The notes: generated by a model from the sequence alone, not told the origin. A DNA stretch of 64,000 nt from Lytechinus pictus (GCF_037042905.1 NC_087255.1:23250001-23314000); one strand, 5' to 3'. Shown: positions 29,301-64,000, counted from the stretch's first letter. Made by a program: numbers and translations.

Positions 29301-30146
29301 CCTAGGTACATGTAGGTCATAAGCAGATCAGAGTTGATTGTCAAATCAAATGATTTAATGAGATAGACGCATATTCTTTACTTTAGTGGATATTAGTTAC
29401 TCTTGTATCATTCCAGTTTATCCTAAAGAGTAATTTGCCTCTAAAAGTTTTGTCAGAAAAAAAGATGTAATTTGAACCTATAAGCCTGTATACTGTGATT
29501 TGGTTCGCATCGCGTTGATGAGTTGTCAAAAGTTTTGACATAAAATAAATAGAAATGCATTTGCATTGAATAAATTTTGCTTTGATTTTTGTTTAAGTGC
29601 AAGAGAATCAATATGATGTTTGGAAAGGGGAGGGGGTGGGGCGGTAGAAGAGAGAGAGATAGGGTGTGTTTATGCATGTGAGAGAGATAATCTGTGTGGG
29701 TTTGAATGAGGGGGGTGTGAGAGATGAGGCGAGGGGGAAGGGTTGGTCTTGTAATTCAAGATAGACGGGTGTGAATGTATGTGATGGAGAGAGTGTTGGA
29801 GCGAGGGAGGAGGGGCAAGAAGTCTTGGGAGAAGCCGGGTTTAGAAGAAAATAAGAGGCATATTCTTATTGCACTATTGTGTACCTTAGAGAGAGAGGGA
29901 GGGGGTGCGTGATCTGTGATGGGGTTAGGGGAATATATTATATTGGTGTAATCGTGTACCTCGAAAATCAGAAGAAAATGACCCCCTCCCCGGGCTATGT
30001 ACACTCCCTTGACTTAACCTTTATTCGAGCTAAAACTAGTTCGCTTTACTAGGTATGTCCTTGAATGAGAAAAGAAATTTATTCGGAAAAGTACAATAGA
30101 AATGTAGTTTTGTTTTGGTTTGACACTATCAATCTGACAGAAGGAT

Positions 30147-30578
30147 GTTGTAAGCTACGGAGTCTGACTACCCTACTTTATTTTCACAAATCTTACTACA
30201 ATATTTGTGACGCCCCCTCGTAAAAATTAAAATGATACGACGAAGTCAAATATAGTGACTTTTAGTCAAATTTGACACCTTGTTTAAAGCTACTATTGAA
30301 GCCTTCAAGGCCGGAGTTGGTTAAAAGTCACGATGTCATGAAATAAAGACTTATTGTCTGTTAAAAAAAGGAAAGAAACAATAAGGTTTGTCATTGTTGG
30401 CGATGTGTTGTTAAAAGCTATCGATATCGAAAACAAATGTCCAAAAATGCATCGCACCCCCTCATCTCCCTCTTCTTCTGTATCTTATATTCTTCCTTTA
30501 TTATTGTCTGTCAAAAATTAAAGAAAAAACTATGTTAACTTTGTCATTTTTTGTTTGCGATGTCTTGTTAAAAGCTAT
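30147..30578 (+). promoter_or_regulatory. Cluster of GTTAAAAGCTA-type motifs upstream of LC8 paralog 1
   Basis: Exact copies at 30410, 30567; variants at 30147, 30282, 30320. Function is inferred. Confidence 0.5.
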
Positions 30579-30619
30579 CGATATCGAAAAAAATAAAGAA
30601 TTAACAATTTAAAAAAAAC

Positions 30620-30820
30620 GGGGGCGTCGTGGTCTTGTGGTTATGACTCGCATCTTTCAATCTGAGGGTCGTGCGTCCGATTCCCAGTCTTAGCGGATTT
30701 TCCTTCAGCAAGAAATTAACGTAGAATAGGTTTAGCAGGGGCAATATCATAAATATAGGAGCGCCTTGAACACCTAACAAGGTGGATACGTGCGCTAAAT
30801 CCTATTTTTATTTATTATTT
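30620..30820 (+). mobile_element. tRNA-derived SINE
   Basis: A-box-like gtggtcttgtgg, degenerate B-box gtccgattccc, 3' gagcgccttgaa...gcgct with (tat)n tail. Confidence 0.7.
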
Positions 30821-31544
30821 CTTCTGCCTTTCCTCTTCTTTCTAAATTTTCCTTTTTCCCTCCCCTTTTCACTAGACCTACTTAAAATCATAGGGGGCGC
30901 GGTCGCCAGCTGTTGCCCCTCGCAGCGCTGCTCCTGTATGCGTAAGGAAGAATGGATCCTCTGTAAATCTGCAACATTTTTTGTCTTCTAAATTGATACG
31001 ATTTCACCACAATCCTGTTTTTTTAATCACCGATGAAGTAACAGCAAAGTCAAAACTACATAGTGGCGGATTCATACAGGGGGTGGGGCTTTAACAAAAA
31101 AAAGTAGGAGAAAGGAAGGGTAGTCACTACTCACGGGAATAATGTTCCAGTGCTTTCTTTGTTGCTTTTTTTACAAGAAATCACCCCCTCCAAACAAATC
31201 AAAATTAAATTTGGGAAGTTGCATGGGTCCCCATTCCATCTCCCCCCTTCTGAGATTTGCGCCTGATTCTACATGTGACATCGGCATTGCAAGACGTAAA
31301 ATTTGAATGACATTTATTTATTTGTCTTCTTTAGTTGTTACAGTCCAAATCTTCTTCTTCATTGTTCCTTTTATTTGACGTCTTGCTATATCGTCCCTTT
31401 TTTCGATTCCTCCACTTATGTGCTTGTTTTCATTTCTTTCTTTTTAACTGCATGCGTGTGGGTGTGTGAACGAGACTTCTGTGCCGTAGGCCTATAATAG
31501 TAGATGTATCGAATCATTTCTTTGCATTCTCCATCCTTGTCTAG

Positions 31545-31621
31545 AGCAGCATCAGATGCCAGTGCAGTGAATCTCTCAAGAAGGTCTCTTGCTTCAATCT
31601 TTCACAACTATTTCCACTATC
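31545..31621 (+). other. Predicted 5'-UTR exon of LC8 paralog 1 (contains 4-codon uORF MPVQ*)
   Basis: Pyrimidine tract + gtctag acceptor, ATC|GTAAGT donor; same layout in paralogs 2, 4, 5. Confidence 0.65.
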
Positions 31622-31980
31622 GTAAGTTATACCCTTATCTCTATAGACCAAGTATATAATGGAAGTTATTTTTCGAAAATATCGAAATCTATGTCCGTTA
31701 TTTTGTGCTCTGTTTACTTTTTTGGGAGGGGGTGCTTCTTTTTACAAATTCATCGTTTCTTTTCATCTTTTTCGTTTAATTTCAAATCCAAACGGAAAGT
31801 AAATTCTTTCCTTTTATATTGGGCTGATGTTTTTAGTAAACATGAGCTTAGATTTCATCCAGAGAACATAAAAAATGTAGTGAGATATGGATAAAATCTT
31901 AAAATTTGTATCTATAAAAGCTTTCTTAATAAATGATTAAAAAAGGTTTCAGTCCTATCGCATTTTCTTTCACGTTCTAG

Positions 31981-32289
31981 ATGGATCGTCGAGGTGGCGG
32001 CGGATCTCGGTCTGCAGGCAACAAGAATGACGAACTCATCGTTAAGAGTGCAGACATGTCAGACGAAGACCAGGATCTTGCCTGTGATATCGCTAAGGAC
32101 GCCATGGGGAAGTTCAACGTCGAGAAGGACATTGCCGCCCATATCAAGAAAGAGTTCGATAAAACCCACGAACCGACTTGGCACTGCATCGTCGGGCGCA
32201 ACTTCGGCAGCTACGTCACGCACGAAACAAAGAGTTTCATTTATTTTTACATCGGTCAGAAAGCATTCCTTCTCTTCAAGTCGGGATAG
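31981..32289 (+). CDS. DYNLL: Dynein light chain LC8-type, paralog 1 (102 aa)
   Basis: ADM...[13 protein letters not shown]...[19 protein letters not shown]...LLFKSG; splice acceptor ttctag directly before the ATG. Confidence 0.96.
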
Positions 32290-32959
32290 AAGTTTAAAAG
32301 ACAAATTCTGATAGTTTCTTTAGATTAGATCAGAATTCAACATTCACAGCGAAATTTGTTCCCAAAGTCGTTATCACCGAGCGGGAGTTCGCGTCGTCGT
32401 CAGATAAGAATAGATGATGATTAAAATTTATCAACTCAATTCTTGCATGAATATATTTTATTTAGGAATAACATTAAGTGATATCTTTTCGAAAAAAAAT
32501 CTGTGAAATTATCTTCGGATAATAACTATTTCATTTTTAAGCAACACCTATCTCCCATGTATGTCATGTGTATGTACATGTATATATTTCATCTGACATA
32601 GCATAGGATGTAAATTACTCATTCTAAAATTGAGAAATATATCTCGTGGTGCTACTATATACTGTAGTTTCAAACATATTCCAGCTATATAGGATGAAGA
32701 AGTGTTATGAAGACTGACCTCGGTAAAGCTATAAATCAATTTTGGGCCATTGTTGCGTGTCACATATGCTCTAGATAATTTACTTTTGACATCAAAATAA
32801 TGATTGCCGTGATAATATTGTTGCCTGTATAGAAAATGGTTTTAAAGGTGACAATGAGCAGATAATGATTTAATGATTTGCAAAGTTGAAAATTCACCGT
32901 TGTCTAAATGATGAAAGTATTAATCTTTCTTCTGCTTATTTTGGTAACATTGTCGAGGT

Positions 32960-33341
32960 GGGTTTGATAGTTACTATTTAATAGTTTGATCGATTATTGA
33001 TTATTTTATTGACTAATTGAGTACATGGTTGCTCAATGGAATGATTGTTTGATGATGAGGATAAATTCTAGACCCAAGATGTTGATCACAAAAACACATA
33101 GGCATGTATTCCAGACCTTATTTTGGTACAATATGATTGATTGATTGATTTGATAAATAAATTGATTGCTCTGTCAACTGATTAATTCCTTAATGCTTAT
33201 TAATCTATCCTACGCTTCGTTGGTTTGTCAGTATGTGATTGATTGAAGAAAAATCGAAATATTAATTTTATTTTTATTGGTTGGTTGATTGATTGATTGA
33301 TTGGTTGACAGGTTGATTGATCGATTGGTTGACTGACTGAC

Positions 33342-33377
<36 letters not shown>

Positions 33378-34800: not shown

Positions 34801-34826
34801 ATTGCATACTTGAAATAAATATTTAA

Positions 34827-36502: not shown

Positions 36503-36538
<36 letters not shown>

Positions 36539-39979: not shown

Positions 39980-40313
39980 TAGAAATATCTTTCTCACGAT
40001 ACAACCGTTTTGGGAAATGCCTCACACCTAGCACACAACAATGGTTAAAAGCTACTGAGTCAACTAAATAAAAAGGGAATCGTCAAAGGAAAAAATGCAG
40101 TGTAAAGAAACCAAATATGGCGTTAGAATAAACAGCCCCTTGAACGTTATTGCATTGACAAGACGCCAAGGTAGTATATTCATAACATCACGTTACAAGA
40201 TTGGGTAAAGAGTACATGCTTTAAACAATATATTGCTGGCTTGTTACAACCTCCATGTATGCCGGGGTGGGGTGTAAATGCAATAAGATTTACATTGTTT
40301 TGTTAAAAGCTAC
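39980..40313 (+). promoter_or_regulatory. Conserved non-coding block with two GTTAAAAGCTAC motifs upstream of paralog 2
   Basis: Motifs at 40044 and 40302; patchy homology to 44910-45240. Confidence 0.5.
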
Positions 40314-40581: not shown

Positions 40582-40736
40582 NNNNNNNNNNNNNNNNNNN
40601 NNNNNNNNNNNNNNNNNNNNNNNNNNNNNNNNNNNNNNNNNNNNNNNNNNNNNNNNNNNNNNNNNNNNNNNNNNNNNNNNNNNNNNNNNNNNNNNNNNNN
40701 NNNNNNNNNNNNNNNNNNNNNNNNNNNNNNNNNNNN
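40582..40736. other. Assembly gap (others at 43187-43364, 53378-53630, 58685-58860)
   Basis: Runs of N. Confidence 1.
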
Positions 40737-41771: not shown

Positions 41772-42086
41772 ATGAGTCGCAGTGGTCGTAGTACCTTCAT
41801 GTCCGATGACAAGCGATCAGAAAAAGACAAACTTGTCGTTAAGAATGCTGACATGTCTGACGAAGACCAAGAGGATGCCATATCAGTTGCGCAGGAAGCG
41901 TTCGAGAAGTTTACCGTCGAGAAGGACATCGCCGCCCACATCAAGAAAGAGTTCGATAAGACCCACGAACCGACATGGCACTGCATCGTCGGGCGCAACT
42001 ACGGCAGCTACGTCACTCACGAGAAAGGCGGTTTCATCTACTTTTACATCGGTCAGAAAGCGATCCTGCTCTTCAAATCAGGATAG
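41772..42086 (+). CDS. DYNLL: Dynein light chain LC8-type, paralog 2 (104 aa)
   Basis: KNADM...[13 protein letters not shown]...[16 protein letters not shown]...ILLFKSG; acceptor ttctag|ATG. Confidence 0.96.
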
Positions 42087-43369
42087 GGGAAAAAATCAGC
42101 GAAATAGAATCAAGTAGCTGGAATCATTTTAGGTGCATATATGACTTTGGATGAAACTCTAGGTTGACGAAGATATTATAATAGAAAACAGAGGTAGATG
42201 GATGCTTTCTCTTCATGTGTTGCCGATGTAATATCACCGATTTATATTTATTTTAATAAGTTTTCAATTCAGATGATAAAGCATAGTTTATAATAATATA
42301 ATAATGATTTATATGTAACATAATATTTACAATTATCATCTATCATCCATCATCGTTAGGGCCAATATTCAACTCATCTGCGATTCGTGGAATATTTTCC
42401 CTAACTCATGGAATATTTATGGTATTCCATTCTGTGCCATCCAATATAATTTAATTATTGTATCATTTATTGTCTTAATTCAACAATAAGGAAATTAGAA
42501 GTATATTATATCACTTAAATTCTTGATATGAATCGCAGTGCAAAAATCAGATTACCCCTACTGTACAGAACCTAAAGAAAATGATAACAATCTGTGAATG
42601 GAAACAAAAAGAATAAATAAACAAATAAATAAATATATTGATTATGTAGTCTTATATCGATATTATAAGGAATTCGAATTTGAATGAATATTCTCCTGTA
42701 TTCAATTGTATAGTGCACTGCATCGTGCAGTTGAATAGGTTGAAAATTTTGCCCAATTATCTCGATATAGCTTTTAATATTATCTATTCCAATAAAGGAT
42801 ATAAACTGTTATTTTTTTTTTTGGTTGACAATTGGAGATTGGAAAAAAAATCGAAAGTTAATGGATCATCATTTTTTTAAAACATTATTATCATTGCGTT
42901 GCTATTATTGTTATTCTTCTTATAGTTATCATTCTTATTTTTATTACTGGTGTTGTTATTATTATTAATCAACTATTGTTACTCATTATATATTATCTAT
43001 TAACAGTCACTGTAATGTAACGAAATACAAAGAATTCGAGATCAAGCCCGAATGAAAAGAGAAACAGTTTGTTAATTTGATATGTTCAGTAAGGTATACT
43101 TTGGATATTTCATATGTTTTTTGTGTATCTTTGTATTGATATAATTAAGAGAAATCGCCCGAAAGGGTTTAATCAAGACAGATCTGNNNNNNNNNNNNNN
43201 NNNNNNNNNNNNNNNNNNNNNNNNNNNNNNNNNNNNNNNNNNNNNNNNNNNNNNNNNNNNNNNNNNNNNNNNNNNNNNNNNNNNNNNNNNNNNNNNNNNN
43301 NNNNNNNNNNNNNNNNNNNNNNNNNNNNNNNNNNNNNNNNNNNNNNNNNNNNNNNNNNNNNNNNAGTAG

Positions 43370-44909: not shown

Positions 44910-45240
44910 AGAAATATCTTTCTCGCGGTATAATTATTTTATTCAATGTACATGGCGAACGTTACAGCCTCCAGTGCCAATTCAAAGAAAAGAATAGACT
45001 TTATACTAAAATTTTATAGATGACAATAATAAAAAATGGTGTTATAGAATAAAGCAACTCTTCACCTCAACCTTGTCAAGACGTCAAGGTTTTCCATTCA
45101 AAACACTTCTCCAAACAATCTGAAAAGGGTTCCCAAGACAGAATGTCCATACAGTGTTGTTTGTTAAAAGCTACGGCTAATATGAAGGATAATTTTTTTT
45201 TATAATATAGGTGATTATTGTTTTGTTAGAAGCTACGAAA
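44910..45240 (+). promoter_or_regulatory. Conserved non-coding block with GTTAAAAGCTAC / GTTAGAAGCTAC upstream of paralog 3
   Basis: Motifs at 45163 and 45225; homology to 39980-40313. Confidence 0.5.
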
Positions 45241-47069: not shown

Positions 47070-50000
47070 ATGTCGAAAACCAGTCATTCTACATATAGCT
47101 TCAGTACCAGTGCAAAGACTAGTGGTGGTTTCACAAGCAACTCACCGGTAAGTAGGCCTACTCTGTTATTTTTTTTTTTTTTCAAATATATACATTTTTT
47201 GGAGGGGTATATGAAGTTCTTCGTGCAGTCTTTTGTGTTGTATTGTCTTGTCTTGGGTTAAGTTTAATTCATTCTAGTATTTAGTGGTTCGAGGGAAGAA
47301 GCTGTATTTATGAGTATCCCTTGACGTCGAAATTTGATAAGTATTTTCTCTAGTCTGCCGGCTAGTTCTGTGGATGAAGTTTTTGGGGTTGATGGCAACA
47401 AGACGTTTTATTATTTGAAAGATTAGGCTAAGTCTACAGACTTTCCTTTCTCAAGAGTGTTTGTTATATCATGGACAGTAAGTATATAGAACGTATAGAA
47501 CGTTTTGCACTAAAACCATGTTGGTTGTCAACCGAGATTTCATGCATTTCCAAAATGTACAATGTTTTCGAGTATCTTATAAGCAATACCAGTTAATGAT
47601 ATTCCTCTGTAGTTAGAGGGATCAGACGTGTCCCCCTTTTAAAGATAGGACAAACATTAGCCCTTTTCAACTGTAAAGTGACATAACCCTCATTTATTGA
47701 GGACTGATAGATATTACTGGGGTTATTTCATTTGCTTCCATTTGAGCTATGGAGGAAGGTCATCTGGTCTAGATATCTTGTTACGATTAATGCTGTGGAG
47801 TTGTTTCAATATTCCAGGGGCCCGTTTCATAAAGAGTTACAACTGATCAGAATCAACTTTCCCAAATAAATGCAAATGCTGACTTGTATAAATGATTCCG
47901 TGTATTGATTTAAATTGGAACTCTCTAAGTCGGCTACTTAATGTGCATCACGTTGGTCTTTTAAAATATTTTCGATGTCTTTATCTGAAAAACGATATAT
48001 TGCATTTTAGTCTTGTGAATATTCCAGGTGTTATTTCTTTCTGGTAAAAAAATGTTGTATAAAGTGTTTTTTATGCATTTTCATTGATTAATACAATATT
48101 TTTACCTGGCTAATAAAAAAAGCAATGTCAGGTTGAATTGTGTCTCTATCTTTTCTCATATAACTGTGTCTCTATCTTTTCTCGATATCAGGCATAATCG
48201 ATTAACAATATTTACATCAACAAACCATAATACAACAAATTTTTTAGCGCCCCCCAAAAAAAATAAACAATAAATAAATGAAATCAGATAAATCAATTAA
48301 AAATAAATTAGTAAATGAATAAAATGAAATAAAAATAATAAATAATTATGAAAAAATACATCATGACTCCGCCCCTGTCTGTGATGATAAGATAATGGCA
48401 ACAGAATGGTTATCAATTGTAGAAAATCGGGGTTTGTGTGCATATACCTGATACAGATATAAACAATTTGATTTCTCCAATAAAAGGCTTTTCATCAAGT
48501 AGATGCTTTAGTACTTGTTTTACACATAATCAGGCAAGGTACCTTATGACCCGATGGGAGAATGACAGCAAGTTATATATAATTCCAGCTTAAAATGGGT
48601 TAACAGATACATAGCCGTAACTTATTTTTTTCACATAAAAATCCTCTTCACCTTGCTAATATAATCAACTCTGAACTAGAAAATGTTACCGAATGGATAA
48701 GAGCAAATAAATTGTCACTAAATCTTCAAAAAACAAAATACATGTTGTTTAGCAACTCCATAAATACACTTCCTGTTGATATTATTTTGGATGGAACTCC
48801 CTTGGAAAATGTATCCCATATTAAGTTTCTTGGAATAACAGTCGATAATAAGCTCTCATGGAAATTTCACATAGATAACATATGTAAAACTATTTCACGC
48901 AACATTGGTATAATTAACAAGCTTAAATTTTGTTTACCATTATCGTCCCTGCTTACATTATATTCATCCCTTATATTGCCTTATTTAAATTATGGAATTT
49001 TAGCGTGGGGTAACACACAACAAACACTCTTAGACAAATTACTCCTATTACAAAAGAAGTCTCTACGTATTATATGTCACACGGCATATTTGTCTCATAC
49101 TGACCCATTATTTTTTTAACATAGAATATTGAAAATTAAGGACTTATATTTGTTTAATCTCGGTCAGTTTATGTATAACTATAACAACAACAACCTCCCA
49201 AATGTATTCAATTCAATGTTTCCAAAAAATCAATCCATTCACAACTATCCAACAAGGCGATTGGGTGAATTTCATTTACCACTTTTAAGAACTTTGCGGG
49301 CTCAGCACACATTTATATACGATGGACCGAAGTTATGGAACTCACTTCATAATGATATAACAAATGCAAAATCTTTGAACTCTTTTAAGACTAAATTCAA
49401 ATTATCTCTATTAAAACCTTATAATATACTCCCAAATTAATTTTAATTCATCATTTCTGTCAAGTCATCATCATTATTATGTCAAGTCATCATCATTATT
49501 ACTTTAAACTAAAATTAAAACATAAAATTATTATCCTTTTTTTATTAAAAAAATCTGACACAAGTCCTTCTCAGATGTGCTCATTATTGTGTCTATCCTC
49601 TCCTCTATTTTCTCCTCTCCAGTCCGCTTATCCGCCTTCCTACCGGTTATTTGTTTAACGGCATCAATCACATTTTTCGTGCATTATATTCTTTCCAGGT
49701 TATTTTATATATTTTTTCTCCTCTTATACACATCATTGAATCCAGTTTGCTTGAGTCCACGACGGCATTTGTTCTATCTACGTACAGCAGCACCCATCCA
49801 TCTTCTCAGGGCATTCTCCCCCTTTTTCCCTTTTTTTTTCTTCTCAAGTTTTTCTGGGGGGGGTGGGAAGGGTAAATATTTTTAGGACGGGTTGTTTTGT
49901 CCTTCACCAAACTGTATATTTTTTATTACTTTGTATTTATTTTGTGAGTATTTCCCTCTCATTTATTCACTCTTTTCTCATTTGATTATCTGTATTTATA

Positions 50001-50945
50001 CTTTGTTATTTTGTTATTTGTTGTGTTATCTATTTCTTGAGGGGCCCACATTGTACAAGCATTGCTTTTTAGTGGGTCCCTCCATTTCCATCTTAATTTA
50101 ATTTCTATTGAAAAATAGTATATATATTTAAAACCTACAATGTGTTGCCCAAATCGTCTAAGTGTTTTTTTTTTTCACTACATATGTATAATTAATTTTG
50201 TTTGCAACGGATACAAATATTTATGTTTTATATATGGTATACAATTTGTTTTTGTTTGATGGAAGTGAAATAAATGAATTTGAATTTGAATTGAATTTGA
50301 ACTTTCCTTTGTATTCATTTTAATTACAACATGTAATTTTGTATGAATTTATCTTCTTGAAATAAAAAAAACCAAAACAATGACTTCCGATGAATTTATC
50401 ACTTTCCGTTCTTAAGTTACAATTAATTGGTCGTCTCGAAGCTCCTTTTTATTCAATTTTTGTTTTTAAAAAATGTGCTATATTCATATTTATCTTTTAT
50501 CAGTTTAAAAAAATGACAAATTTATGATTGATATTCCCAAACTAGTTAGAAGCATATGCTAATGTGTAGATCTAGATGGCAACCTAATTAAGCGTCTATT
50601 CAAAATTCTCCCTCTTTCATCTAGTTCATTAGTTCACCGTCACCATCATCGTCGTCATCGCTGTCATCGTCAAAGAAAAAAGATCAAAAGCCAGTCATCA
50701 AGAGTGTAGATATGACAGAGGACATGCAAGATCGAGCCCTCGACCTCGGCGTGGATGCCATGGAAAGATTCCAAACCGAGAAAGATCGCGCCGCCCACAT
50801 CAAAAAGACCTTCGACCTCGAGTTCGACACCACATGGCACGTCATCGTTGGCAAGCATTTCGCAAGTTTCGTCACGCACGAAGCAAAGTGTTTCATCTAT
50901 TTCTACATCGGTCCAATGGCTTTTTTGCTTTGGAAGTCGGGCTAA
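47070..50945 (+). CDS. DYNLL: Dynein light chain LC8-type, paralog 3, two coding exons join(47070-47147,50625-50945), 132 aa with Ser/Thr-rich N-terminal extension
   Basis: LC8 core in ORF 50712-50945 stays open upstream to acceptor catctag at 50624 (FISSPSPSSSSSLSSKKKDQKPVIKSVDM). Upstream exon MSKTSH...NSP ends G|gtaagt in matching phase 0. The core is certain; the join is inferred. Confidence 0.85.
48619..50301 (+). mobile_element. 5'-truncated CR1/L2-group LINE (RT C-terminus, 3' UTR, (TTTGAA)n tail) in the intron of LC8 paralog 3
   Basis: W..ANKLSLN..KT, KFLG...D.KLSW..HI, LY.SLI.PYL.YG...WG, GPKLWNSL; one in-frame stop at 49117; aaataaa + gaattt repeats at about 50270-50300. Confidence 0.9.
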
Positions 50946-52959: not shown

Positions 52960-53690
52960 ATGACTGTGCATATTAATTGAATGATGTAATGACGATTGTT
53001 CATGTTGATGTTTGTGATGGTGTTTGTGGTGGTGTAGGTAGTGGTGATGATGATGATGGTAGCGGTGGTGGTGGTGATGATGATGATGATGATGATAATG
53101 ATGGCCGTGAAGATGGATGAGGCCAGTGATAATGACCAATCAGTCCACTAATCAAACAATCAATAAAACTATCAATCACTAATTCAATCAATCAATCATT
53201 AATGAATCGAGAAATCAATAACAAAATTAATAATTCAACCTGTCAATCAACCAATCGATCAATTACCGAATCAACCAACCGATCAATCAATCAACCAATC
53301 AAGAAATCGATCATTCAATCAAACAACCAATCAATAAATCGACCAAACAACCAACCATCCTACTAAAACAATCAATCNNNNNNNNNNNNNNNNNNNNNNN
53401 NNNNNNNNNNNNNNNNNNNNNNNNNNNNNNNNNNNNNNNNNNNNNNNNNNNNNNNNNNNNNNNNNNNNNNNNNNNNNNNNNNNNNNNNNNNNNNNNNNNN
53501 NNNNNNNNNNNNNNNNNNNNNNNNNNNNNNNNNNNNNNNNNNNNNNNNNNNNNNNNNNNNNNNNNNNNNNNNNNNNNNNNNNNNNNNNNNNNNNNNNNNN
53601 NNNNNNNNNNNNNNNNNNNNNNNNNNNNNNTCAATAACAAAATTAATAATTCAACCTGTCAATCAACCAATCAATCAACCAATGAAATTA
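52960..53690. repeat. (GAT/GGT)n then (TCAA)n microsatellites flanking gap 53378-53630
   Basis: Directly visible. Confidence 0.9.
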
Positions 53691-54948: not shown

Positions 54949-55254
54949 CTAGCCAGATTTGAAGAGAAGAATCGCCGTCTGTCCGATGTAGAAGTAGGTG
55001 AAATTATCTTTCTCGTGAGTCACAAAGCTGCCGAAGTTTCGCCCGACGACGCAATGCCATGTTGAGTCGTACTTGTTGTCGAACTCCTTCTTGATGTAAG
55101 CAGCGACGTCCTTCTCGACGGGTTTGTTCTGTTTGTCACCGAGCTTATCCATGGCTAACTTGATGGCTTCTTCCTGCATTTCCTCGCCCATGTCAGCGTT
55201 TTTGACAACGGCTTTGTCCTTCTCATTCGACATTCCCGAGTAACCGCGATTCAT
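54949..55254 (-). CDS. DYNLL: Dynein light chain LC8-type, paralog 4 (101 aa)
   Basis: KAVVKNADM...[13 protein letters not shown]...[16 protein letters not shown]...ILLFKSG; acceptor gctag|ATG on minus strand. Confidence 0.96.
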
Positions 55255-55891: not shown

Positions 55892-55993
55892 TACTGATGG
55901 ATAACTATGCATTTGGAGCTAATAACACTGAAAAGATACTGTCAAATTTATATCATTAATGTATTATAAATTTACGAAATAAGTTTGACTTAC

Positions 55994-56054
55994 GATTGAA
56001 TTTGTAGGAATTTGTTGACGAGTCCAAAAATGAAGACAATAAAATCGAAATATT
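55994..56054 (-). other. Predicted upstream exon of LC8 paralog 4
   Basis: Minus strand: gtctcttcag acceptor, ATC|GTAAGT donor; a further CAG|GTATGT donor at 56201. Confidence 0.65.
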
Positions 56055-56488
56055 CTGAAGAGACGTTTCTTTGACGAGATTGAAATGCAGAATAAGCTTT
56101 TGATACACATACGTCTCTTGCAGTTTATACGTGAAGCTCGTTATTATCACACGAGCCGCACGCCCTCCCCCCCCCCCCTCGAGAGACGAATACCGACATA
56201 CCTGACAGTGTAGTTGAGAAATGAAAACAATTAGTGCAAAAGAGTACAAAAGAGAATACCAACAAACCCAATTCAGCCATTAAAGTCAAAACACACAAGA
56301 AAACTGTCTGACTTTAATGAATGGGATAGATAAAGGAAGCTGTCTCGAATTGGTACGCACTAAGAAATAGGGGTTCAAATTTGAACCATATGAGTTGATA
56401 TAATAGCAGCACCAAAAAGGATGCTAATTGATGCAATTTTGCTCATTTGTGCATTTTTAAGGGTGCAATTAGCTATAAGCACACTGTA

Positions 56489-57660: not shown

Positions 57661-57977
57661 GGTTGAGTACAACAAAATGTGGATCAATTTTTTGCTGAAG
57701 GAAATTACGCCATGGCTGGGATAATAATTAAGTTTACCCTAAATGCCTCTTAGTTTTGTAAATTCATTTCGTCTAGGAATATTTCTAAAGCAAGGAAATT
57801 GGGTTTTGCTTTGTTTAAATTCACAGTCATAACGGGTCAAGTCACACGAAAGTATTTTACAGTATTTGTAAAGGTCGTACAATCAGTTGGTTTGGAGTCG
57901 GCCTTGATGGTGTGGCTGTAGTATAAGTTGTGTTTTTTTTTACATCGTTCTCATTATTTGAATCGTTTCTTTGCTAA

Positions 57978-58040
57978 GGTGCCGTGGCCGAGTGGTCCAC
58001 ACTATGAAAGTCCGGGGTTCGATCCCGGCACGGCCCTTGA
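57978..58040 (+). mobile_element. Truncated tRNA-derived SINE head
   Basis: gtggccgagtgg A box, ggttcgatcc B box. Confidence 0.6.
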
Positions 58041-58274
58041 CCGAGACATTTGTCTTTGAGCTTGCATCAAATATATGAAAATTCTATATCGATTTTATCT
58101 TGCATCAAATAAATGAAAATGCTATATTTATACCAATGTGTGCACGTGTTGTTTTTACAAGTTCTTTACTTTGATTATCAGTAAGTATTTTTGATAAAGC
58201 TTTTTAAGTATTATAAAGTGTTTCGATTCATTTTTTGTGATGCTTGGATATTGTTCAGGAATTTATCTTTGCCA

Positions 58275-58524
58275 GTGGCTTTTAACAGAATAGGGAACCT
58301 GTAACCATTTTAGGGGTGTTTCTCGTAGCCCCTGTGTTTTTAACCTCTTCTTCGTTTCGGCGTTAAAAGGAATCCGTGGGAATATTTTAGACTCTGTCTG
58401 CTTTCATTCTTTTGTACCTCTAAAGTCTTACATTGTCTTTGGTGAAAAGTAGACCTTGCGCCGTAAAGTGTGGTATCTTATGTAAGTAAATATGAAATTT
58501 ACCACTCACTCAATAGCTTTTAAC
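58275..58524 (-). promoter_or_regulatory. GTTAAAAGCTA / GTTAAAAGCCAC motifs upstream of paralog 4
   Basis: Reverse-complement copies at 58514-58524 and 58275-58286. Confidence 0.45.
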
Positions 58525-59950
58525 AAAATTTCACCTAAAATAGTAGTACCCACGAATAACCAACATTCTCACAGGACTGAATTATGACAAAGATTTTCTT
58601 TCTCTCCTCTAAAACTGAGTATTTTGGCTTTGCGGTAGGTCGAGGGTTCGATTCTCTAGTCAATTTTAATGATTGGTTGTTTGANNNNNNNNNNNNNNNN
58701 NNNNNNNNNNNNNNNNNNNNNNNNNNNNNNNNNNNNNNNNNNNNNNNNNNNNNNNNNNNNNNNNNNNNNNNNNNNNNNNNNNNNNNNNNNNNNNNNNNNN
58801 NNNNNNNNNNNNNNNNNNNNNNNNNNNNNNNNNNNNNNNNNNNNNNNNNNNNNNNNNNNNTTCTTTGTGAATAATTGATTTGCATGTTTGTTAGTTATGC
58901 CTCAATGACATCAACGAATCCGACTCCTGACAGATCAAAGCTAGTAAATCACTGGTCGGTTGGAATCAGTTTTATTGGTTTGACATTAACATTGGAGTCT
59001 TTGCTGATGGCTCACAATCATGATCTACTTGAAAGATTAATGAAATATATAAATTGTCAGCGTCCTCTTTCAATCACGAAACGTATGGAAATCATACATA
59101 AGTTCCTGAATGTTCATCTTGAATTAAACTATCATTTAGTCCTGTATTTTTTTTCAGTTTGGCAGTCCGTGGAGGATCCAGAGTTTAAAAGAGTGGTGAT
59201 CGAGGAGTGAGCAAATGGAGGGCTGAGTCCAACGAATGTAGAGGGTGTCAACACCGCCAATGTTGCTGACCTCTACGTTCGTTGGCTGAGCCCTTCTGGG
59301 CTCACAGGCCTAATTCATTTCCCATAGACTCGTGTGTTAAAGTGGCACTTAAAAATAATTCATAAAAATAAGGAGGAAATTCGAGGGTTGAATGTTTACC
59401 ACCAGTGGATAAGATAAATGTCTGACATTCCATATCTGACCAGAAAAGGGTACCTCGACCGGCTCATTGTAAAAATAAATCAGCATTTATGAAGACTACA
59501 CCTGACGGGATCAAATTCCTCACTTGAGAGAGTAAAATGGCCCTAATTCTTCCGCCAGATAAAATATAGTTCCATAGTGGTGATATATCTTTCCAATTTG
59601 GACAAAGGAAGTTCAGTAGGTACCCTCCCTAGAATCAGTGTTAGATTGTCAGTCATATTCATTCATTTTTGTCAATCAGCAATATCAAATTAAAAAAATT
59701 GAGCAATGGGTTGGGTAGAATGAATATCTTTTGCCTGCCAGTTGTGATTAGGCTCGTGCAACCTTCTTGAAATTAATTGCAATGTGAACACAATGTCATA
59801 TTCAAGATTTATAATTGTTAATTTCCACAGAAAACAATACAAAATGTTTTCATAGCATACATTAACTGCTATAGCTGCATTCAACCATCAATCAAATCGA
59901 TCAGTCAGACATTCAATCAATCATTCAATGAGTCAATCAATAGTGATCAA

Positions 59951-60200
59951 CCGGGCATGGTGGCTCAGTGGTATATAGAGCGCCCGCCTCATGAACGGCA
60001 GGTCATGGGTTCGATCCCCGGCCGAGTCATACCAAAGACTTATAAAAATGGGAGCTTCTGCCTTCTTGCTTGGCGCTCAGCATTTAGATTGGAGAAGGGT
60101 AACAATAACATATTATGTTATGCAGGGCCCGCTGGAAGAGCAGTCTTATGATGGAAGTGGCTACCCTGGGTAAATAAACCGTTATAATAATTATTATTAT
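59951..60200 (+). mobile_element. Near-complete tRNA-derived SINE (core resembles the Meta-domain type)
   Basis: tggctcagtgg A box, ggttcgatcc B box, gtcataccaaagact...gcttggcgctcagca core, aataaa + (tat)n tail. Confidence 0.8.
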
Positions 60201-60620
60201 TAATCTATCAGCTAATCATTATTTCAACCAATCAATCAACCAATCAATCAATCAACAAATCAATCAATCATTCAATCAATCAGTCGACCTATCAAACAAT
60301 CAATCATCCAATCTATCAGCCAATATATGAATAAATAAATAAATCAGTCAATCAACCAACCAATCAATCGATCAATCAACAAATCAATCAATCAACCAAC
60401 CAATCATTCAATCAATCAGTCGACCTATCAAACAATCAATCATCCAATCGATCAGCAAAAATATAAATAAATAAATCAATCGATCAATCACACAATCATC
60501 CAGTAAATTTAATGACTCAATCAAACAGTCAGTCAAACAATCTTTCAGCTAATTAATCTATCAATCAATCAAGTCAATCAAACAATAATATAAATCAATT
60601 AATCATTCGAATATTAATAA
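60200..60620 (-). repeat. (TCAA)n microsatellite tract (also at 59885-59950)
   Basis: Directly visible; interrupted by the SINE. Confidence 0.9.
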
Positions 60621-61569
60621 ATAGTTGAAGACAGTCATATCAATTTTCATACTTGCGCAATAACGGAACACAATAACAACGGGGAATTATTTCTTTGAAT
60701 TCATGTTTAATATACAATAGATGTCAATAGAAGATAATTAGTTATGAGAAATCAATTAATCTGATGCTGCAAGTTAAGGAACGGGTGATTTTTCTGATAT
60801 CTATGTTATTGATCGCTGCAACCATAACGGTTTCATAAACTGGTTTCGAAAAATCCCTTCAATCGGTATCAATATGTCATCATTAACATGAAAGTTATGA
60901 TTATTCTATAACATACAATCAAAATTGAAATAGATAGGCCTACTTTTATAAGATTCTCTTTTTTCTTTTTACAAACAAGATCATAGTACGTTGATGTACT
61001 TTTAATCTTGAAAAAGTACCATTCATAAATATGTCGGCTGACTTCCATTCACCTTAAATTCAATCTCTAATATTTACTATAAACATCTCTATCTATCATG
61101 TTCATTAAATAAAAAGCGAAATTTGCAAAAACATGATTTTCTTTATCTACTATGATAGTAATGATTGTAGACTGATACGCCGTCACCATCGTTATCGTCA
61201 TCATGGTCATCGATGTCCGGCGTAAGAATTATGAGAATATAATTATACTCAGCCGGGAGCAATCGTGCACTCCATAGAATTATTACAGATTTACAAAATT
61301 TAATGATTATATATTATAGACCAACAGCCATATTTGACTAGTGTTTAGTAACTTTGTGAGAGAATACAATCTTCGGATATCTTCATAACCGGAATCTTCG
61401 ACATCTGATCGACTACGGCATGATGACATACTGAGGTTGAGTTCATTCTTTCTTTAGGGGTATTCTGATTTCATTCCATTCATTTGCCTGAAATTGGTCT
61501 GTTTTTATGTCTATGTCGGGATTAGGTTTTTAATCTAAGGTTAGTGATTTAAGGTAAAGAACTTCGATT

Positions 61570-61810
61570 TGACGTTTTTCTTGATGCCGGATAATTGATG
61601 CTTCTATGTACGGTTACTTCGGTATAATCATTGTCACACATGTCGGTTTTTATGATGTCTTAGTGATGCCGGATATCCGCTGTTCCTATAAGTTTATCAA
61701 AAGTATCTGGTTATGATGTCTTCCTTAATGCCGGTTTCCGATGTTCCTATAAGTTTATCAAAAGTATATGGTTATGATGTCTTCCTTGATGCCGGATATC
61801 CGATTTTTCT
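61570..61810. repeat. About 60-bp tandem repeat (tgatgtcttcc..atgccgg...tgttcctataagtttatcaaaagtat)
   Basis: Two full and two partial copies. Confidence 0.85.
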
Positions 61811-61969
61811 AAATTCTGTCTGAATTGAAATGAATCCAATGACCGGGGTAATAATATGCTGTAACGCGCTTTGAGCCATTCTGTGAAAAGCGCTTTATAA
61901 AAAAAAATGGCTATTATTATTATTATTATAATTGTTATTTAGGGATTCTATATGGTCGATACCCAGTAG

Positions 61970-62278
61970 CTAGCCAGATTTGAAGAGAAGAATGGCCGTC
62001 CGTCCGACGTAGAAGTAGATAAAATGATTCTTCTCATGTGTCACGTGACTGCCATAGTTACGACCCACAATGCAATGCCAGGTTGGCTCGTGCTTTGTGT
62101 CGAATTCCTTCTTGAGTTCGGCAGCGATGTCCTTCTCGAGTGGTTTGTTCTGTTTATCGCGAAGCATTGCCAACGCGAGTTCGACGGCGTCATCTTCCAT
62201 CTCTTTGCTCATGTCGGAATTCTTGATTTCAAACTCCTTGTCGGGCTTTCCGGAATAGCTTGATCCTCCTCGGTTCAT
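61970..62278 (-). CDS. DYNLL: Dynein light chain LC8-type, paralog 5 (102 aa)
   Basis: IKNSDM...[13 protein letters not shown]...[18 protein letters not shown]...ILLFKSG; acceptor ctatag|ATG on minus strand. Confidence 0.96.
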
Positions 62279-63076
62279 CTATAGAGTTAGGGATGATAGA
62301 TAAAAGAAAACACATCGTTATTAATGTGAAATCATCTTCAAATTGTAGTAGTAAGGTTGGACAAAAAAAGGCCCAATTGTTAACCATCACTGGGCAACAT
62401 ACTGTCCACACAACTATGGTTAAAGTCTGTCCAAATTGGGTAATAAAAACTTAAAATTGGGTAATAAATTTGCTCAATTGGATAATAATTGCCCAAAATA
62501 TAAATATTTTTTACCAACATACATTACCCAAAACAGTGGACAGCGTGTTGCCCAACATTTTAAGTGTATAGGATTCCATATAATCAGGGGAAGATGGTAG
62601 AATAATGATCCATAATTCAGTTTGCAAGAAATTACGTAATTGTCCACTTTTTTATAAGTCAAATAATTTTTCTTTTTAAAATACGGTGCGTGGGTCTGAA
62701 AATCGTTCATAGCGCCATAATTTTACTATCGTCGGTGGCCAATTTGAAGAAAACTTCCCTAATTTTTTGACGAGTCTGAGAGCGAACTTTGTCACATCTT
62801 TGGATACTTAGAAAATAACAGAAATACTGTCCATCAATAGCCAAACCTAAATGGCATGTATTGGCCATTGAAATCATTTGACATCCACTGGCTCCCAATA
62901 AATCAAGCAGACTATATAAGATTATAATAAATATGTCATGATTATACGAAACCGAATTGAAGCACTGAAGAAAAAAGTAATATAACATAAGATCTATAAA
63001 GCAAATACTATCATCACCAAACACTTAAAATGTTGGGGAGCATTCTGTCCACTTTGTTGGGTAATGTACGTTGGTA

Positions 63077-63108
<32 letters not shown>

Positions 63109-63495
63109 GTATACGTTTATATTAAAAAGGTAAACATTAAAAAGGGCGTCATCAACTTGAAAAGGGCCACAATCTAGATTTCCACCAAATAAAAAAGAAA
63201 AATTATTTCTTGTTCTCAAACTACTTTGGCTATACCAGCATGCTTTTAAACAGGCACATCTTTGAAAGATGCCGGTAGCACTGAGATGGAATTTATTAGA
63301 AAAAGAACAGTAATTCGTCCTAAGACAAAATGACAAAAACGGAAAAAGGGAGAAAGAGAGAAACGAGGGAGAAAGAAAGGGAATGATTACAAATATTGAA
63401 AATACATGGTTGTAGGATCTTTAGAACTCTAAAAATATCAAGATGCTTTCCACACACACATGCACAAAAATGAAATAATTAACTTCTTCACTTAC

Positions 63496-63568
63496 GATTA
63501 AGTCTTGGGTGATTAAAATCGGTGAACTAAAATAAACAAGTTGCGGAATATTCTTCAGAGATGCTGTC
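63496..63568 (-). other. Predicted upstream exon of LC8 paralog 5
   Basis: Minus strand: cgtcag acceptor (weak), ATC|GTAAGT donor; start resembles the paralog 2 exon. Confidence 0.55.
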
Positions 63569-64000
63569 CTGACGATTGTGAATCTCAAAATGGACCTCTG
63601 GTGCAACTCTCCGTCTCAATAATTACAAACTGTCATTTTCCGAAGACTAATCTTTCAACGAGCTGTCCCCGCCTAGAAAACTGACGTTTAGAATAGAAAA
63701 CAATTCATTGACACCCTTCGTGATAGTGTTTGACTCGCTCCGTACTCACAACCAATCGCATTTCAAAACACACGAGGGGGAGGGGGAGACAGTATATGAG
63801 TCAAAAGGTTTGAGGGGCACAACATGGTATATAGGGTGATATTTCTTTTTTTTTAAACGAGAGCGAGTGAGCAAGTGAGCGAATTTCTGACGTTTTGGAA
63901 ATGAAAATCTATGTTTACTATAGATATCGACATTCTGCTTTTTCTTTTTCACCTTGATCGTGGAACTTTTGGGGGCGGGGAGTATAGGAAAAGATGACTT

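What the first reader, a model, noticed from the sequence alone, without database searches (positions are those of the whole stretch)
30000..63600. Tandem array of five divergent, intact LC8 dynein light chain genes
Seen: five full-length LC8 ORFs (+,+,+,-,-). All keep W54-H55, E35-K36, VTHE and the terminal KSG, but differ widely in helix 1, and all have R/G/S-rich or S/T-rich N-terminal extensions. Known: canonical LC8 (DYNLL1/2, Cut up) is an 89-aa, extremely conserved dimerisation hub, usually present in few copies; divergent LC8-like chains occur in axonemal dyneins and radial spokes. Inference: a lineage-specific expanded family under purifying selection but diversifying, plausibly specialised for sperm/cilia or the germline, and able to form heterodimers with different client grooves. 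The array may extend past the window.
Basis: partly seen in the sequence, partly recalled or inferred. Interest (0 to 1): 0.8.

Follow-up and report, generated by a model that had tools for sequence, protein, structure and literature searches.

The report
Sea-urchin array of divergent LC8 genes
A sea urchin chromosome carries six neighbouring, fast-evolving but selectively maintained copies of the normally near-invariant LC8 "dimerisation hub" gene; the array is real and conserved among urchins, is already present as automatic gene models, and is a lineage-specific expansion of a well-known family.

Summary
The window (Lytechinus pictus, CM073236.1) has five LC8-type genes (PF01221, E 1e-33 to 1e-38) in the order + + + - -. 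None touches an assembly gap. Copy 3 has no ATG of its own: it starts in a 26-codon upstream exon (47070-47147), as in RefSeq XP_063962645.1.

- **Extent:** a sixth copy lies about 6 kb past the window. An NDUFA7-like gene follows, so the array has six genes between a vasa-like helicase gene and NDUFA7.
- **Conservation:** all six have counterparts in L. variegatus. The same order and orientation occur in Strongylocentrotus purpuratus.
- **Selection:** ortholog dN/dS is 0.05-0.22, and no bootstrap interval reaches 1. Yet the copies match canonical LC8 at only 47-60 of 84 core positions, against 75/84 for a protist LC8.
- **Where they differ:** changes cluster in strand β1, helix α1, the α1-α2 loop (3-residue insert in copies 4 and 5) and some β3-β5 positions (F62Y, Y65F/H, Y77N, F86W).
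- **Origin:** they are not retrogenes. Each ATG follows a splice acceptor, and each gene has GTTANAAGCTA 1.4-3.3 kb upstream, as at a canonical LC8 promoter in Diadema.

Sperm, cilia or germline specialisation and heterodimers remain untested. Novelty: new members of a known kind.

The parts
31981..32289 (+). c1: LC8 paralog, single coding exon, 102 aa, R/G-rich N-terminal tail
   Evidence: ORF. PF01221 at 127 bits. 97% identical to L. variegatus XP_041475799.1. An AG acceptor lies directly before the ATG. dN/dS against L. variegatus is 0.087.
41772..42086 (+). c2: LC8 paralog, single coding exon, 104 aa
   Evidence: ORF. PF01221 at 131 bits. AG|ATG. dN/dS is 0.05 against L. variegatus and 0.21 against S. 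purpuratus Sp_2.
47070..47147 (+). c3 first coding exon: 26 codons (MSKTSHSTYSFSTSAKTSGGFTSNSP), CAG acceptor just upstream, GTAAGT donor
   Evidence: An exact match to the N-terminus of RefSeq XP_063962645.1 was found in the window. The same exon, acceptor and donor occur in S. purpuratus.
50625..50945 (+). c3 main exon: S-rich linker plus the LC8 domain, the most divergent copy (C56V, G63A, Y65F, Q80P, F86W)
   Evidence: PF01221 at 115 bits. AF2 model with the LC8 fold; Foldseek TM about 0.9 to LC8 crystal structures. dN/dS against Sp_C is 0.14.
54949..55254 (-). c4: LC8 paralog, 101 aa, 3-residue insert in the helix1-helix2 loop
   Evidence: ORF. PF01221 at 124 bits. In the AF2 model the insert falls in the loop at residues 39-46. 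dN/dS against Sp_D is 0.185.
55994..56110 (-). Likely 5' untranslated exon of c4: TATAAA about 20 bp upstream, GTAAGT donor at 55993
   Evidence: RefSeq model XP_063962646.1 (140 aa) reads 39 junk-like residues from this exon into the c4 ATG.
61970..62278 (-). c5: LC8 paralog, 102 aa, same loop insert as c4, Y65H and F62Y
   Evidence: ORF. PF01221 at 120 bits. Found in record CM073236.1. L. variegatus counterpart XP_041475438.1.
30410..30577 (+). Two sense copies of GTTAAAAGCTA, 1.4-1.6 kb upstream of the c1 ATG
   Evidence: Conserved at the same place in L. variegatus.
40044..40312 (+). Two sense copies of GTTAAAAGCTA plus conserved blocks, 1.5-1.7 kb upstream of the c2 ATG
   Evidence: The blocks TTCTCACGATAC, GTCAAGAnGnCAAGGT and TTTTGTTAAAAGCTACGAG are shared with S. 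purpuratus Sp_1, Sp_2 and Sp_B.
45163..45235 (+). GTTAAAAGCTA and GTTAGAAGCTA, 1.85 kb upstream of the c3 start exon
   Evidence: The same pair with the same 62-63 bp spacing occurs in L. variegatus L002.
58514..58524 (-). GTTAAAAGCTA in the sense orientation of c4, 3.3 kb upstream of its ATG
   Evidence: It lies 160 bp from the gap at 58685-58860, so further copies could be hidden.

Best explanation
The region is a six-gene tandem array, five genes in the window, of LC8-type (DYNLL-like) paralogs in Lytechinus pictus. It arose by DNA-level tandem duplication of a whole LC8 gene unit: upstream GTTANAAGCTA element, 5' untranslated exon, intron, and one coding exon whose ATG directly follows the acceptor. 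The duplications predate the Lytechinus/Strongylocentrotus split and perhaps the echinoid/asteroid split. All copies have been kept by purifying selection. Each product keeps the LC8 fold, the swapped-strand dimer core (TWHC[IV]VG, GS[YFH]VTHE) and the C-terminal KSG. I therefore infer that each still forms LC8-type dimers that clamp short disordered client strands in two grooves. The copies differ from canonical LC8 and from each other in four places: the exposed helix 1 surface, strand 1, the loop before helix 2 (3-residue insert in c4 and c5), and several positions that I take from memory of LC8-peptide structures to line the groove (F62Y, Y65F/H, Y77N, A82S, F86W). They also carry 10-45-residue disordered N-terminal tails with a shared M-[SN]-R-x-G-x-S-S-[YF]-S-like start. 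The likeliest function is a set of specialised hub variants with shifted client preference or complex membership, transcribed under the control element used by canonical LC8 genes. Shown here: gene structure, copy number, conservation, selection, fold and the shared upstream motif. Inferred: dimerisation, altered client specificity and co-regulation. Unknown: where and when the genes are expressed.
For: PF01221 covers the full profile in all five copies. AF2 models of c4 and c3 have the LC8 topology with disordered tails, and Foldseek gives target-normalised TM about 0.9 to LC8 crystal structures. The sixth copy and the NDUFA7-like boundary come, and no other remnants were found. The same order and orientation occur in S. 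purpuratus. L. variegatus has counterparts of all six in the same 90% clusters. dN/dS is 0.05-0.22, with all bootstrap upper limits at or below 0.48. Array copies plus Asterias P0011 form one clade at 84/94, and a single clade for the array copies alone is not rejected (p-AU 0.37). An AG acceptor immediately precedes the ATG in c1, c2, c4 and c5, in the strongylocentrotid contigs and, two bases upstream, in Asterias. GTTAYAAGCTA with up to one mismatch occurs 11 times in the window against 1.7 expected, and 0 of 100 shuffles reach 11. All 7 exact GTTANAAGCTA sites lie in sense orientation 1.4-3.3 kb upstream of an LC8 ATG. The same holds in L. variegatus and for all S. purpuratus genes except Sp_C. 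In Diadema setosum the motif sits about 30 bp before a CCAAT and about 90 bp before a TATA box of a canonical LC8 gene with the same exon plan.
Against: There is no expression evidence of any kind, so transcription rests on RefSeq models and on selection. Dimerisation and peptide binding are inferred from sequence only. The groove-residue list comes from my memory of LC8-peptide structures and was not computed here. The upstream motif lies 1.4-3.3 kb from the ATGs, and for c4 it is 2.4 kb beyond the likely TATA box and 5' exon, so it may be distal or not a promoter element at these genes. An earlier follow-up in this scan (s1-322056) says the same repeat is the core of an abundant mobile element. 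Sp_C has no copy within 2.5 kb upstream. The tree rests on about 92 columns, most deep nodes are weak, and with fungal LC8 included c3 is pulled to them. A gene-conversion tract between c1 and c2 blurs the branching order.
Confidence: 0.75

Rival explanations
1. The six paralogs are dedicated axonemal subunits for sperm flagella or embryonic cilia. They would replace canonical LC8 in the three LC8 positions of the intermediate-chain/light-chain tower of outer-arm dynein, inner-arm dynein f or dynein-2, possibly as three fixed heterodimers. This would parallel the six LC8-like chains of the Tetrahymena outer arm. It refines the function proposed in the best explanation and does not contradict its evolutionary part.
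For: The tower holds three LC8 dimers, and Chlamydomonas and Tetrahymena put LC8-like proteins in some of these places (PMC10886578, read). PDB entries 6zyw and 7k58 list six distinct Tetrahymena LC8-type chains (LC8_1a/1b, 2a/2b, 3a/3b), all of which c6 matches. The urchin array has six members. The dimer-core residues are shared by all copies, so mixed dimers are sterically plausible.
Against: No expression or proteomic evidence was found. The copies score far higher to canonical LC8 than to any axonemal LC8-like chain, 127 against 30-82 bits, so any parallel with ciliates would be convergent. The match in number (six) may be coincidence, and S. purpuratus has a different count in the homologous interval.
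Confidence: 0.25
2. The copies are functionally redundant LC8 genes kept mainly for dosage. Their sequence differences would be relaxed-constraint drift on surfaces that do not matter, with no change in client range.
For: Most substitutions lie in solvent-exposed helix 1 and the tails. β2 and β3 are nearly intact in c1 and c6. The shared upstream motif would suit joint regulation.
Against: Canonical LC8 is almost frozen from protists to animals (Naegleria 75/84 identical to amphioxus), while the array copies reach only 47-60/84. Pure dosage copies would be expected to stay canonical. Each paralog's specific changes are conserved between Lytechinus and Strongylocentrotus: the c3 set C56V, G63A, Y65F, Q80P, F86W, and the c4/c5/Sp_D loop insert. 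That pattern indicates paralog-specific constraint. Several changes hit β3-β5 positions.
Confidence: 0.15
3. The copies are dead or artefactual: processed pseudogenes or retrocopies, or assembly duplicates of one gene.
For: The coding sequence of four copies is a single exon, which at first sight resembles retrocopies. The region holds four assembly gaps. The L. variegatus assembly does carry the array twice.
Against: All reading frames are intact in three species, with dN/dS 0.05-0.22. A splice acceptor abuts each ATG, upstream exons exist, and c3 has a conserved two-coding-exon structure. The canonical Diadema gene has the same single-coding-exon plan, so that plan is ancestral and not a sign of retroposition. 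The copies are only 46-71% identical to one another, with saturated dS, which excludes assembly duplication. Order and orientation are conserved in S. purpuratus.
Confidence: 0.03

Closest known systems
Canonical LC8 / DYNLL1-DYNLL2 / Cut up (Pfam PF01221), the 89-residue dimeric hub
   Same: Same domain over its full length and the same predicted fold. The same invariant residues are present: EKD at the helix-2 cap, TWH, VTHE and terminal KSG. The exon plan matches the canonical urchin gene, as does the upstream GTTANAAGCTA element.
   Different: Only 56-71% identical over the 84 core positions, where canonical LC8 from protists to animals keeps about 85-94%. They carry 10-45-residue disordered N-terminal tails. 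c4 and c5 have a loop insert. There are substitutions at F62, Y65, Y77, A82 and F86. They form a separate long-branched clade.
Axonemal LC8-like light chains: Chlamydomonas LC6 and LC10, human DNAL4, Tetrahymena LC8_1a to 3b
   Same: Both are extra LC8-family members beside the canonical one, some with N-terminal extensions. They are known to sit as LC8-like dimers in the dynein light-chain tower (PMC10886578).
   Different: They are not orthologous. c6 scores 45-50 bits to LC10 and LC6 and 30-82 bits to the Tetrahymena chains, against 122-127 bits to canonical LC8. The urchin copies are recent derivatives of LC8 proper.
Lineage-specific LC8 expansions in flatworms (many dynein light chain genes in trematodes and cestodes) and ciliates
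   Same: Multi-copy, partly tandem LC8 families with divergent members. Flatworm proteins dominate the non-echinoderm hits. A trematode genome paper listed (PMC7936022, not read beyond its listing) concerns gene duplication and holds the term 'dynein light chain'.
   Different: These are independent expansions in other phyla. The urchin array is small (six genes), syntenic between urchin genera, sits next to a vasa-like gene, and keeps the canonical family's upstream motif.
Fungal LC8 (Dyn2 / NudG type)
   Same: c3 shares with fungal LC8 the states Val/Ala56, Phe65, Pro80 and Trp86 ('GPxAFLLWKS'). Fungal proteins are its best non-urchin hits, at 53-57% identity.
   Different: The resemblance is convergent. 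With fungal rows removed, c3 joins the echinoderm clade. It lies inside the urchin array and has a 1:1 S. purpuratus orthologue.

Membership tests
LC8-type dynein light chain family (Pfam PF01221, Dynein_light) | Full-length match to the family profile above the curated cut-off | tested here: met
   All five window copies score 115-131 bits against a cut-off of 29.1, covering profile positions 1-3 to 86 of 86.
LC8-type dynein light chain family (Pfam PF01221, Dynein_light) | LC8 fold: strand, two helices, then a four-strand sheet, one strand of which is only ordered in the dimer | tested here: met
   The AF2 monomer models of c4 and c3 give the element order E-H-H-E-(disordered β3)-E-E. Foldseek matches c3 to LC8 crystal structures with target-normalised TM 0.85-0.91 and rmsd about 1.9 A.
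LC8-type dynein light chain family (Pfam PF01221, Dynein_light) | Strand-swapped homodimer (His55/Trp54 interface, Ser88 switch) | not testable with these tools
   The interface residues TWH and KSG are invariant in all copies. No multimer prediction or experiment was available.
LC8-type dynein light chain family (Pfam PF01221, Dynein_light) | Binding of TQT-type linear motifs in the two grooves | not testable with these tools
   The β3 strand is intact in c1 and c6 but altered in c2 (F62Y), c3 (G63A, Y65F), c4 (Y65F) and c5 (F62Y, Y65H). Further changes are Y77N and A82S in c6 and F86W in c3. The effect on binding is unknown.
Canonical DYNLL1/2 orthologue group | Near-invariant sequence (about 85-95% identity across animals and protists) and placement within the short-branched canonical cluster | tested here: not met
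   47-60 of 84 core positions are identical to amphioxus LC8, against 71-79/84 for canonical proteins of urchin, brittle star, insect and Naegleria. The copies form a separate long-branched clade.
Axonemal LC8-like chains (DNAL4 / LC10, LC6) | Best reciprocal similarity to LC10/DNAL4 or LC6 and not to LC8 proper | tested here: not met
   c6 scores 127 bits to DYNLL1, 122 to Chlamydomonas LC8, 50 to LC6 (7kzm_H) and 45 to LC10 (7kzm_P). c4 shows the same pattern for the top hits. Only c4 and c6 were run.
Processed retrogene | No introns, no parental promoter, poly(A) remnant and target-site duplications | tested here: not met
   An acceptor AG abuts the ATG in c1, c2, c4 and c5. There is an upstream exon for c4 and a conserved upstream coding exon for c3. 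The family motif lies upstream of every copy. The canonical Diadema gene has the same exon plan. Poly(A) tracts and target-site duplications were not searched for systematically.

The most novel reading that the evidence does not exclude
The six divergent LC8 proteins might be a built-in 'combinatorial hub'. They would pair with each other or with canonical LC8 into heterodimers whose two grooves differ, so that one dimer could join two different client chains. That activity has scarcely been documented for LC8. All members would be driven by one LC8-family control element (GTTANAAGCTA), conserved between Diadema and the camarodont urchins examined here. This element could be the DNA site of the ASCIZ-type feedback factor that senses free LC8. 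Divergent paralogs with altered grooves would then escape or retune that feedback.
Probability: 0.12. Interest if true: 0.7.

Novelty: new member of a known kind. Interest (0 to 1): 0.4.

Why it matters
LC8 is one of the most conserved eukaryotic proteins and a model for how a single hub binds over 100 clients. Animals usually have one or two nearly identical copies. A conserved set of six selected paralogs that have changed β3-β5 and surface residues is a natural mutagenesis series. Comparing their client ranges with canonical LC8 would show which positions set specificity, and whether LC8 heterodimers with two different grooves exist. Sea urchins suit this work: sperm flagella and embryonic cilia can be isolated in bulk, and morpholino and CRISPR tools exist in L. 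pictus and L. variegatus. The shared upstream motif also gives a handle on LC8 transcriptional control outside mammals and flies. Even so, this is an expansion of a known family, already present as automatic gene models, with no functional data, so its value is moderate.

Tried and rejected
- **Expression evidence from public assemblies.** The Logan contigs carrying counterparts of c4/c5 and c6 (L007-L010) are co-linear with S. purpuratus genomic DNA through the intron. They are genomic reads of another strongylocentrotid, not cDNA. They were useful only for dN/dS.
- **Literature.** Eight full-text searches turned up no paper describing an echinoderm LC8 expansion, its expression or sperm or cilia proteomics of these proteins. 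No published DNA motif for ASCIZ was found, so the ASCIZ idea stays speculative.
- **Walking the S. purpuratus array beyond Sp_D.** This failed because the 108-aa product is not on record; it is merged into a 247-aa call.
- **Vasa linkage in other species.** The two vasa-like exon translations I used find nothing in the 10 kb upstream of the L. variegatus or S. purpuratus loci, so conserved linkage to vasa is unverified.
- **Shared 5' untranslated exon among paralogs.** The c4 upstream exon has no detectable similarity near the other copies. Simple TATA-plus-donor scans were not decisive, so transcription start sites remain unknown.
- **The c3-fungal LC8 grouping.** I rejected it as long-branch or convergent attraction.
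- **YN00 dN/dS.** It failed for most divergent pairs; Nei-Gojobori values with codon bootstraps were used instead.
- **Pfam on the ORF pair in the c3 intron.** It gave no hit.

Full report
**What is there.** The window is Lytechinus pictus chromosome record CM073236.1 of assembly GCA_037042905.1. From the range reported for locus L004, it corresponds to about 23,250,001-23,314,000 on the plus strand. ORF listing and translation show five LC8-type reading frames:
- c1: 31981-32289 (+)
- c2: 41772-42086 (+)
- c3: 50625-50945 (+)
- c4: 54949-55254 (-)
- c5: 61970-62278 (-)

Each matches Pfam PF01221 end to end at 115-131 bits, against a cut-off of 29.1. tblastn finds no additional LC8 fragment in the window.

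**Gaps.** The four N runs are at 40582-40736, 43187-43364, 53378-53630 and 58685-58860. All lie outside coding exons:
- the first is between the c2 upstream motif cluster and the c2 ATG
- the second is between c2 and c3
- the third is between the 3' ends of c3 and c4
- the fourth is just upstream of the c4 motif

No reading frame crosses a gap, so continuity or frame across them does not affect the genes. Spacings across them are uncertain and I did not try to fill them. Could a gap hide another copy? In L. variegatus, the only LC8 matches in either locus are c1 and c2, and the c3-type motif pair follows c2 with no LC8 match between them. In S. purpuratus the c3-c4 interval holds no LC8.

**Correction for c3.** The c3 frame has no ATG before the residue equivalent to canonical Met13. 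The 'stop' that opens the frame is the AG of a splice acceptor. The annotated protein XP_063962645.1 (132 aa) begins with 26 residues that I located at 47070-47147. That exon ends in CCG|GTAAGT, and a pyrimidine tract plus CAG directly precedes its GATG. S. purpuratus XP_795424.1 has the same exon, acceptor and donor, with a 0.64-kb intron instead of 3.5 kb. In the DNA alignment of the five copies, the start of the c3 main exon still aligns with the ATGAAYCG start of the others. So the ancestral ATG was lost and a short upstream coding exon took over. Because that exon has its own acceptor, it is probably an internal exon and not the first, untranslated one.

**Extent and neighbours.** Fetching DNA around c5 and beyond shows a sixth gene (99 aa, XP_054764363.1) at window-equivalent 68245-68544 on the minus strand. 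A gene with a PF07347 (NDUFA7-type) product follows, and there is no further LC8. Upstream, at 5.9-20.2 kb, is a DEAD-box helicase gene with RGG repeats and CCHC knuckles, so it is vasa-like. The array is therefore c1> c2> c3> <c4 <c5 <c6, bounded by the vasa-like gene and NDUFA7.

**Conservation.**
- L. variegatus has c1 and c2 at 97-98% identity, 5-6 kb apart. It has RefSeq proteins in the same 90% clusters as c3, c4, c5 and c6.
- S. purpuratus has the same order and orientation: Sp_1> Sp_2> Sp_B> Sp_C> <Sp_D.
- Sp_1 and Sp_2 are 99% identical, which indicates a recent duplication or conversion.
- Sp_B is an extra, more canonical-looking copy with no match in the Lytechinus DNA examined.
- Sp_C is the c3 orthologue.
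- Sp_D carries the c4/c5-type loop insert.
- Genomic contigs of another strongylocentrotid supply further counterparts of c4/c5 and c6.
- Asterias rubens has two divergent LC8 genes head to head. One is 120 aa with an S/T-rich tail.

**Selection and rate.** Nei-Gojobori dN/dS for ortholog pairs:

| Pair | dN/dS |
|---|---|
| c1, L. pictus vs L. variegatus | 0.087 |
| c2, L. pictus vs L. variegatus | 0.049 |
| c2 vs Sp_2 | 0.21 |
| c3 vs Sp_C | 0.14 |
| c4 vs Sp_D | 0.185 |
| c5 vs Sp_D | 0.146 |
| c6 vs strongylocentrotid counterpart | 0.22 |
| Sp_D vs strongylocentrotid counterpart | 0.12 |

Codon-bootstrap 95% limits never exceed 0.48, and at most 0.3% of replicates reach 1. Synonymous divergence between paralogs is saturated, so the duplications are old. 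Over the 84 core positions the copies match amphioxus canonical LC8 at only 47 (c3), 55 (c4, c5, c6), 59 (c2) and 60 (c1) sites. Canonical proteins from brittle star, urchins, an insect and the protist Naegleria match at 71-79. These genes are therefore constrained, but they evolve much faster than the canonical hub.

**Where they differ.**
- Helix 1 matches canonical LC8 at 5-8 of 17 positions, the α1-α2 loop at 0-1 of 3, and strand 1 at 2-5 of 6.
- β2 is 5-6 of 6 and β3 is 5-7 of 7.
- Substitutions in β3-β5: F62Y (c2, c5); Y65F (c3, c4); Y65H (c5); G63A, Q80P and F86W (c3); Y77N and A82S (c6).
- That these positions line the peptide groove is from my memory of LC8-peptide crystal structures. 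It was not computed here.
- c4 and c5 have a 3-residue insert, and Sp_D a 5-residue insert, just before the helix-2 cap.
- The AF2 model of c4 places the insert in the loop at residues 39-46.
- AF2 models of c4 and c3 have the LC8 topology with disordered tails. Foldseek matches c3 to LC8 crystal structures at target-normalised TM about 0.9.
- The paralog-specific states are shared by Lytechinus and Strongylocentrotus orthologues. This argues for paralog-specific function over drift.
- The tails of c2, c4, c5, Sp_1, Sp_D and P0172 share an M-[SN]-R-x-G-...-S-S-[YF]-S pattern.

**Relationships.**
- With fungal sequences in the tree, c3 is drawn to them (flagged as long branches meeting). The other array copies form one clade at 89/94.
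- Without the fungal and Acanthamoeba rows, c3/Sp_C joins the other array copies and Asterias P0011 in one clade at 84/94. Canonical LC8 of animals and protists forms a short-branched comb outside it.
- A tree holding all array copies together is not rejected (p-AU 0.37).
- c6 scores 127 bits to DYNLL1/2 and 122 to Chlamydomonas LC8. It scores only 50 to LC6, 45 to LC10 and 30-82 to the six Tetrahymena LC8-type chains; c4 gives the same top hits.
- So these are derivatives of LC8 proper, not orthologues of DNAL4/LC10 or LC6. The RefSeq label 'LC6, flagellar outer arm-like' on c6 probably reflects the sea-urchin LC6 entry, which is the canonical LC8 (my recollection, untested).

**Origin: not retrocopies.** In c1, c2, c4 and c5 the ATG directly follows an AG acceptor preceded by a pyrimidine-rich stretch. 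The same holds in the strongylocentrotid contigs, and two bases upstream of the ATG in Asterias. For c4, RefSeq model XP_063962646.1 reads through from an upstream exon at 55994-56110 (-). That exon has a TATAAA about 20 bp before it and a GTAAGT donor. The 39 added residues look like translated leader, so this marks the 5' untranslated exon.

**Shared upstream motif.** I tested that motif here.
- The window has 11 matches with up to one mismatch, against 1.7 expected; 0 of 100 shuffles reach 11.
- All seven exact GTTANAAGCTA sites lie in the sense orientation 1.4-3.3 kb upstream of the ATG of c1, c2, c3 (measured to its start exon) or c4. There are none in the first 30 kb.
- c5 and c6 each have one, 2.3-2.4 kb upstream and outside the window.
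- L. variegatus has them at the same places. Sp_1, Sp_2, Sp_B and Sp_D have 4-6 each. Only Sp_C lacks one.
- Around the motif, c2 and the S. purpuratus genes share further blocks: TTCTCACGATAC, GTCAAGAnGnCAAGGT and TTTTGTTAAAAGCTACGAG.
- In Diadema setosum, a canonical LC8 gene with the same single-coding-exon plan has two copies of the motif, then CCAAT, TATAAAAAG, a short exon and a donor.
- The duplication unit therefore included the family's control region. The single coding exon is the ancestral urchin LC8 structure.

**Mechanism, with its status.**
- *Shown:* six conserved, selected genes; the LC8 fold; conserved dimer-core residues; paralog-specific changes; a shared upstream element.
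- *Inferred:* each forms LC8-type dimers that bind disordered client strands. The changed β3-β5 residues, loop and tails shift client preference or complex membership. The genes are controlled together with canonical LC8.
- *One attractive refinement:* they may occupy the three LC8 positions of the dynein intermediate-chain/light-chain tower. Chlamydomonas and Tetrahymena use LC8-like chains there (PMC10886578), and the Tetrahymena outer-arm entries list six distinct LC8-type chains. I give this about 0.25. Nothing here shows sperm, cilia or germline expression.

**Known or new.** All six L. pictus genes and their L. variegatus and S. purpuratus counterparts exist as automatic RefSeq models. 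They are named 'dynein light chain 1/2, cytoplasmic(-like)', 'LC6, flagellar outer arm-like' or 'uncharacterized'. Eight full-text searches found no paper describing this family, its array or its expression. LC8 expansions are known in other lineages such as flatworms and ciliates. I therefore class it as new members of a known kind, of moderate interest.

Noticed in passing
L001 and L002 (L. variegatus CM031025.1, 11.50 Mb and 7.58 Mb): The L. variegatus assembly carries the c1-c2 part of the array twice on one chromosome, about 4 Mb apart. The proteins are identical, with synonymous divergence 0.12 (c1) and 0.03 (c2). RefSeq lists paired accessions for several copies. This is either an uncollapsed haplotype or a recent segmental duplication.
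   Followed up: partly
window 32116-32220 and 41913-42017 (codons about 46-80 of c1 and the aligned part of c2): Divergence between c1 and c2 is mosaic. There are only 2-3 third-position differences per 15 codons in the middle of the gene, against 8-12 per 15 in the first third. The pattern is the same in L. pictus and L. variegatus, which suggests an old gene-conversion tract.
   Followed up: partly
L006 2500-3300, 8450-8830, 13750-14100 (S. purpuratus): Sp_1, Sp_2 and Sp_B share an almost identical upstream block of about 300 bp with four motif copies, although the Sp_B coding sequence is only about 62% identical to Sp_2. Sp_D has five to six motif copies in 66/133-bp tandem units. The motif-bearing units seem to amplify or homogenise locally.
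   Followed up: no
window 5900-20200, + strand: A multi-exon DEAD-box helicase gene with RGG repeats and CCHC zinc knuckles (vasa-like) lies directly upstream of the array: PF00098, PF00270 and PF00271 hits on single exons. Whether this linkage is conserved in other urchins could not be shown.
   Followed up: partly
window 48712-49440, + strand, inside the c3 intron: Two adjacent ORFs (135 and 103 aa) resemble, by eye only, the C-terminal part of a non-LTR retrotransposon protein. They have no Pfam hit. They may account for part of the intron being 3.5 kb here against 0.64 kb in S. purpuratus.
   Followed up: partly
window 22159-22249, - strand: Two one-mismatch variants of the LC8 upstream motif (CTTATAAGCTA, TTTATAAGCTA) lie on the minus strand just downstream of the vasa-like gene, not next to any LC8 gene. 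Their meaning is unknown.
   Followed up: no
c4 residue 84 and c5 residue 7 (window 54949-55254 and 61970-62278): Earlier L. pictus RefSeq proteins differ from the window by one conservative residue each: c4 D to E in 'THEKDNF', and c5 S to N in 'GGSSYS'. These are presumably allelic variants.
   Followed up: no
L011 4292-4567 (-) and 10001-10363 (+), Asterias rubens LR699092.1: The sea star has two divergent LC8 genes head to head (91 aa and 120 aa) next to an MFS transporter gene. Neither has the GTTANAAGCTA motif within the 20-kb locus.
   Followed up: partly
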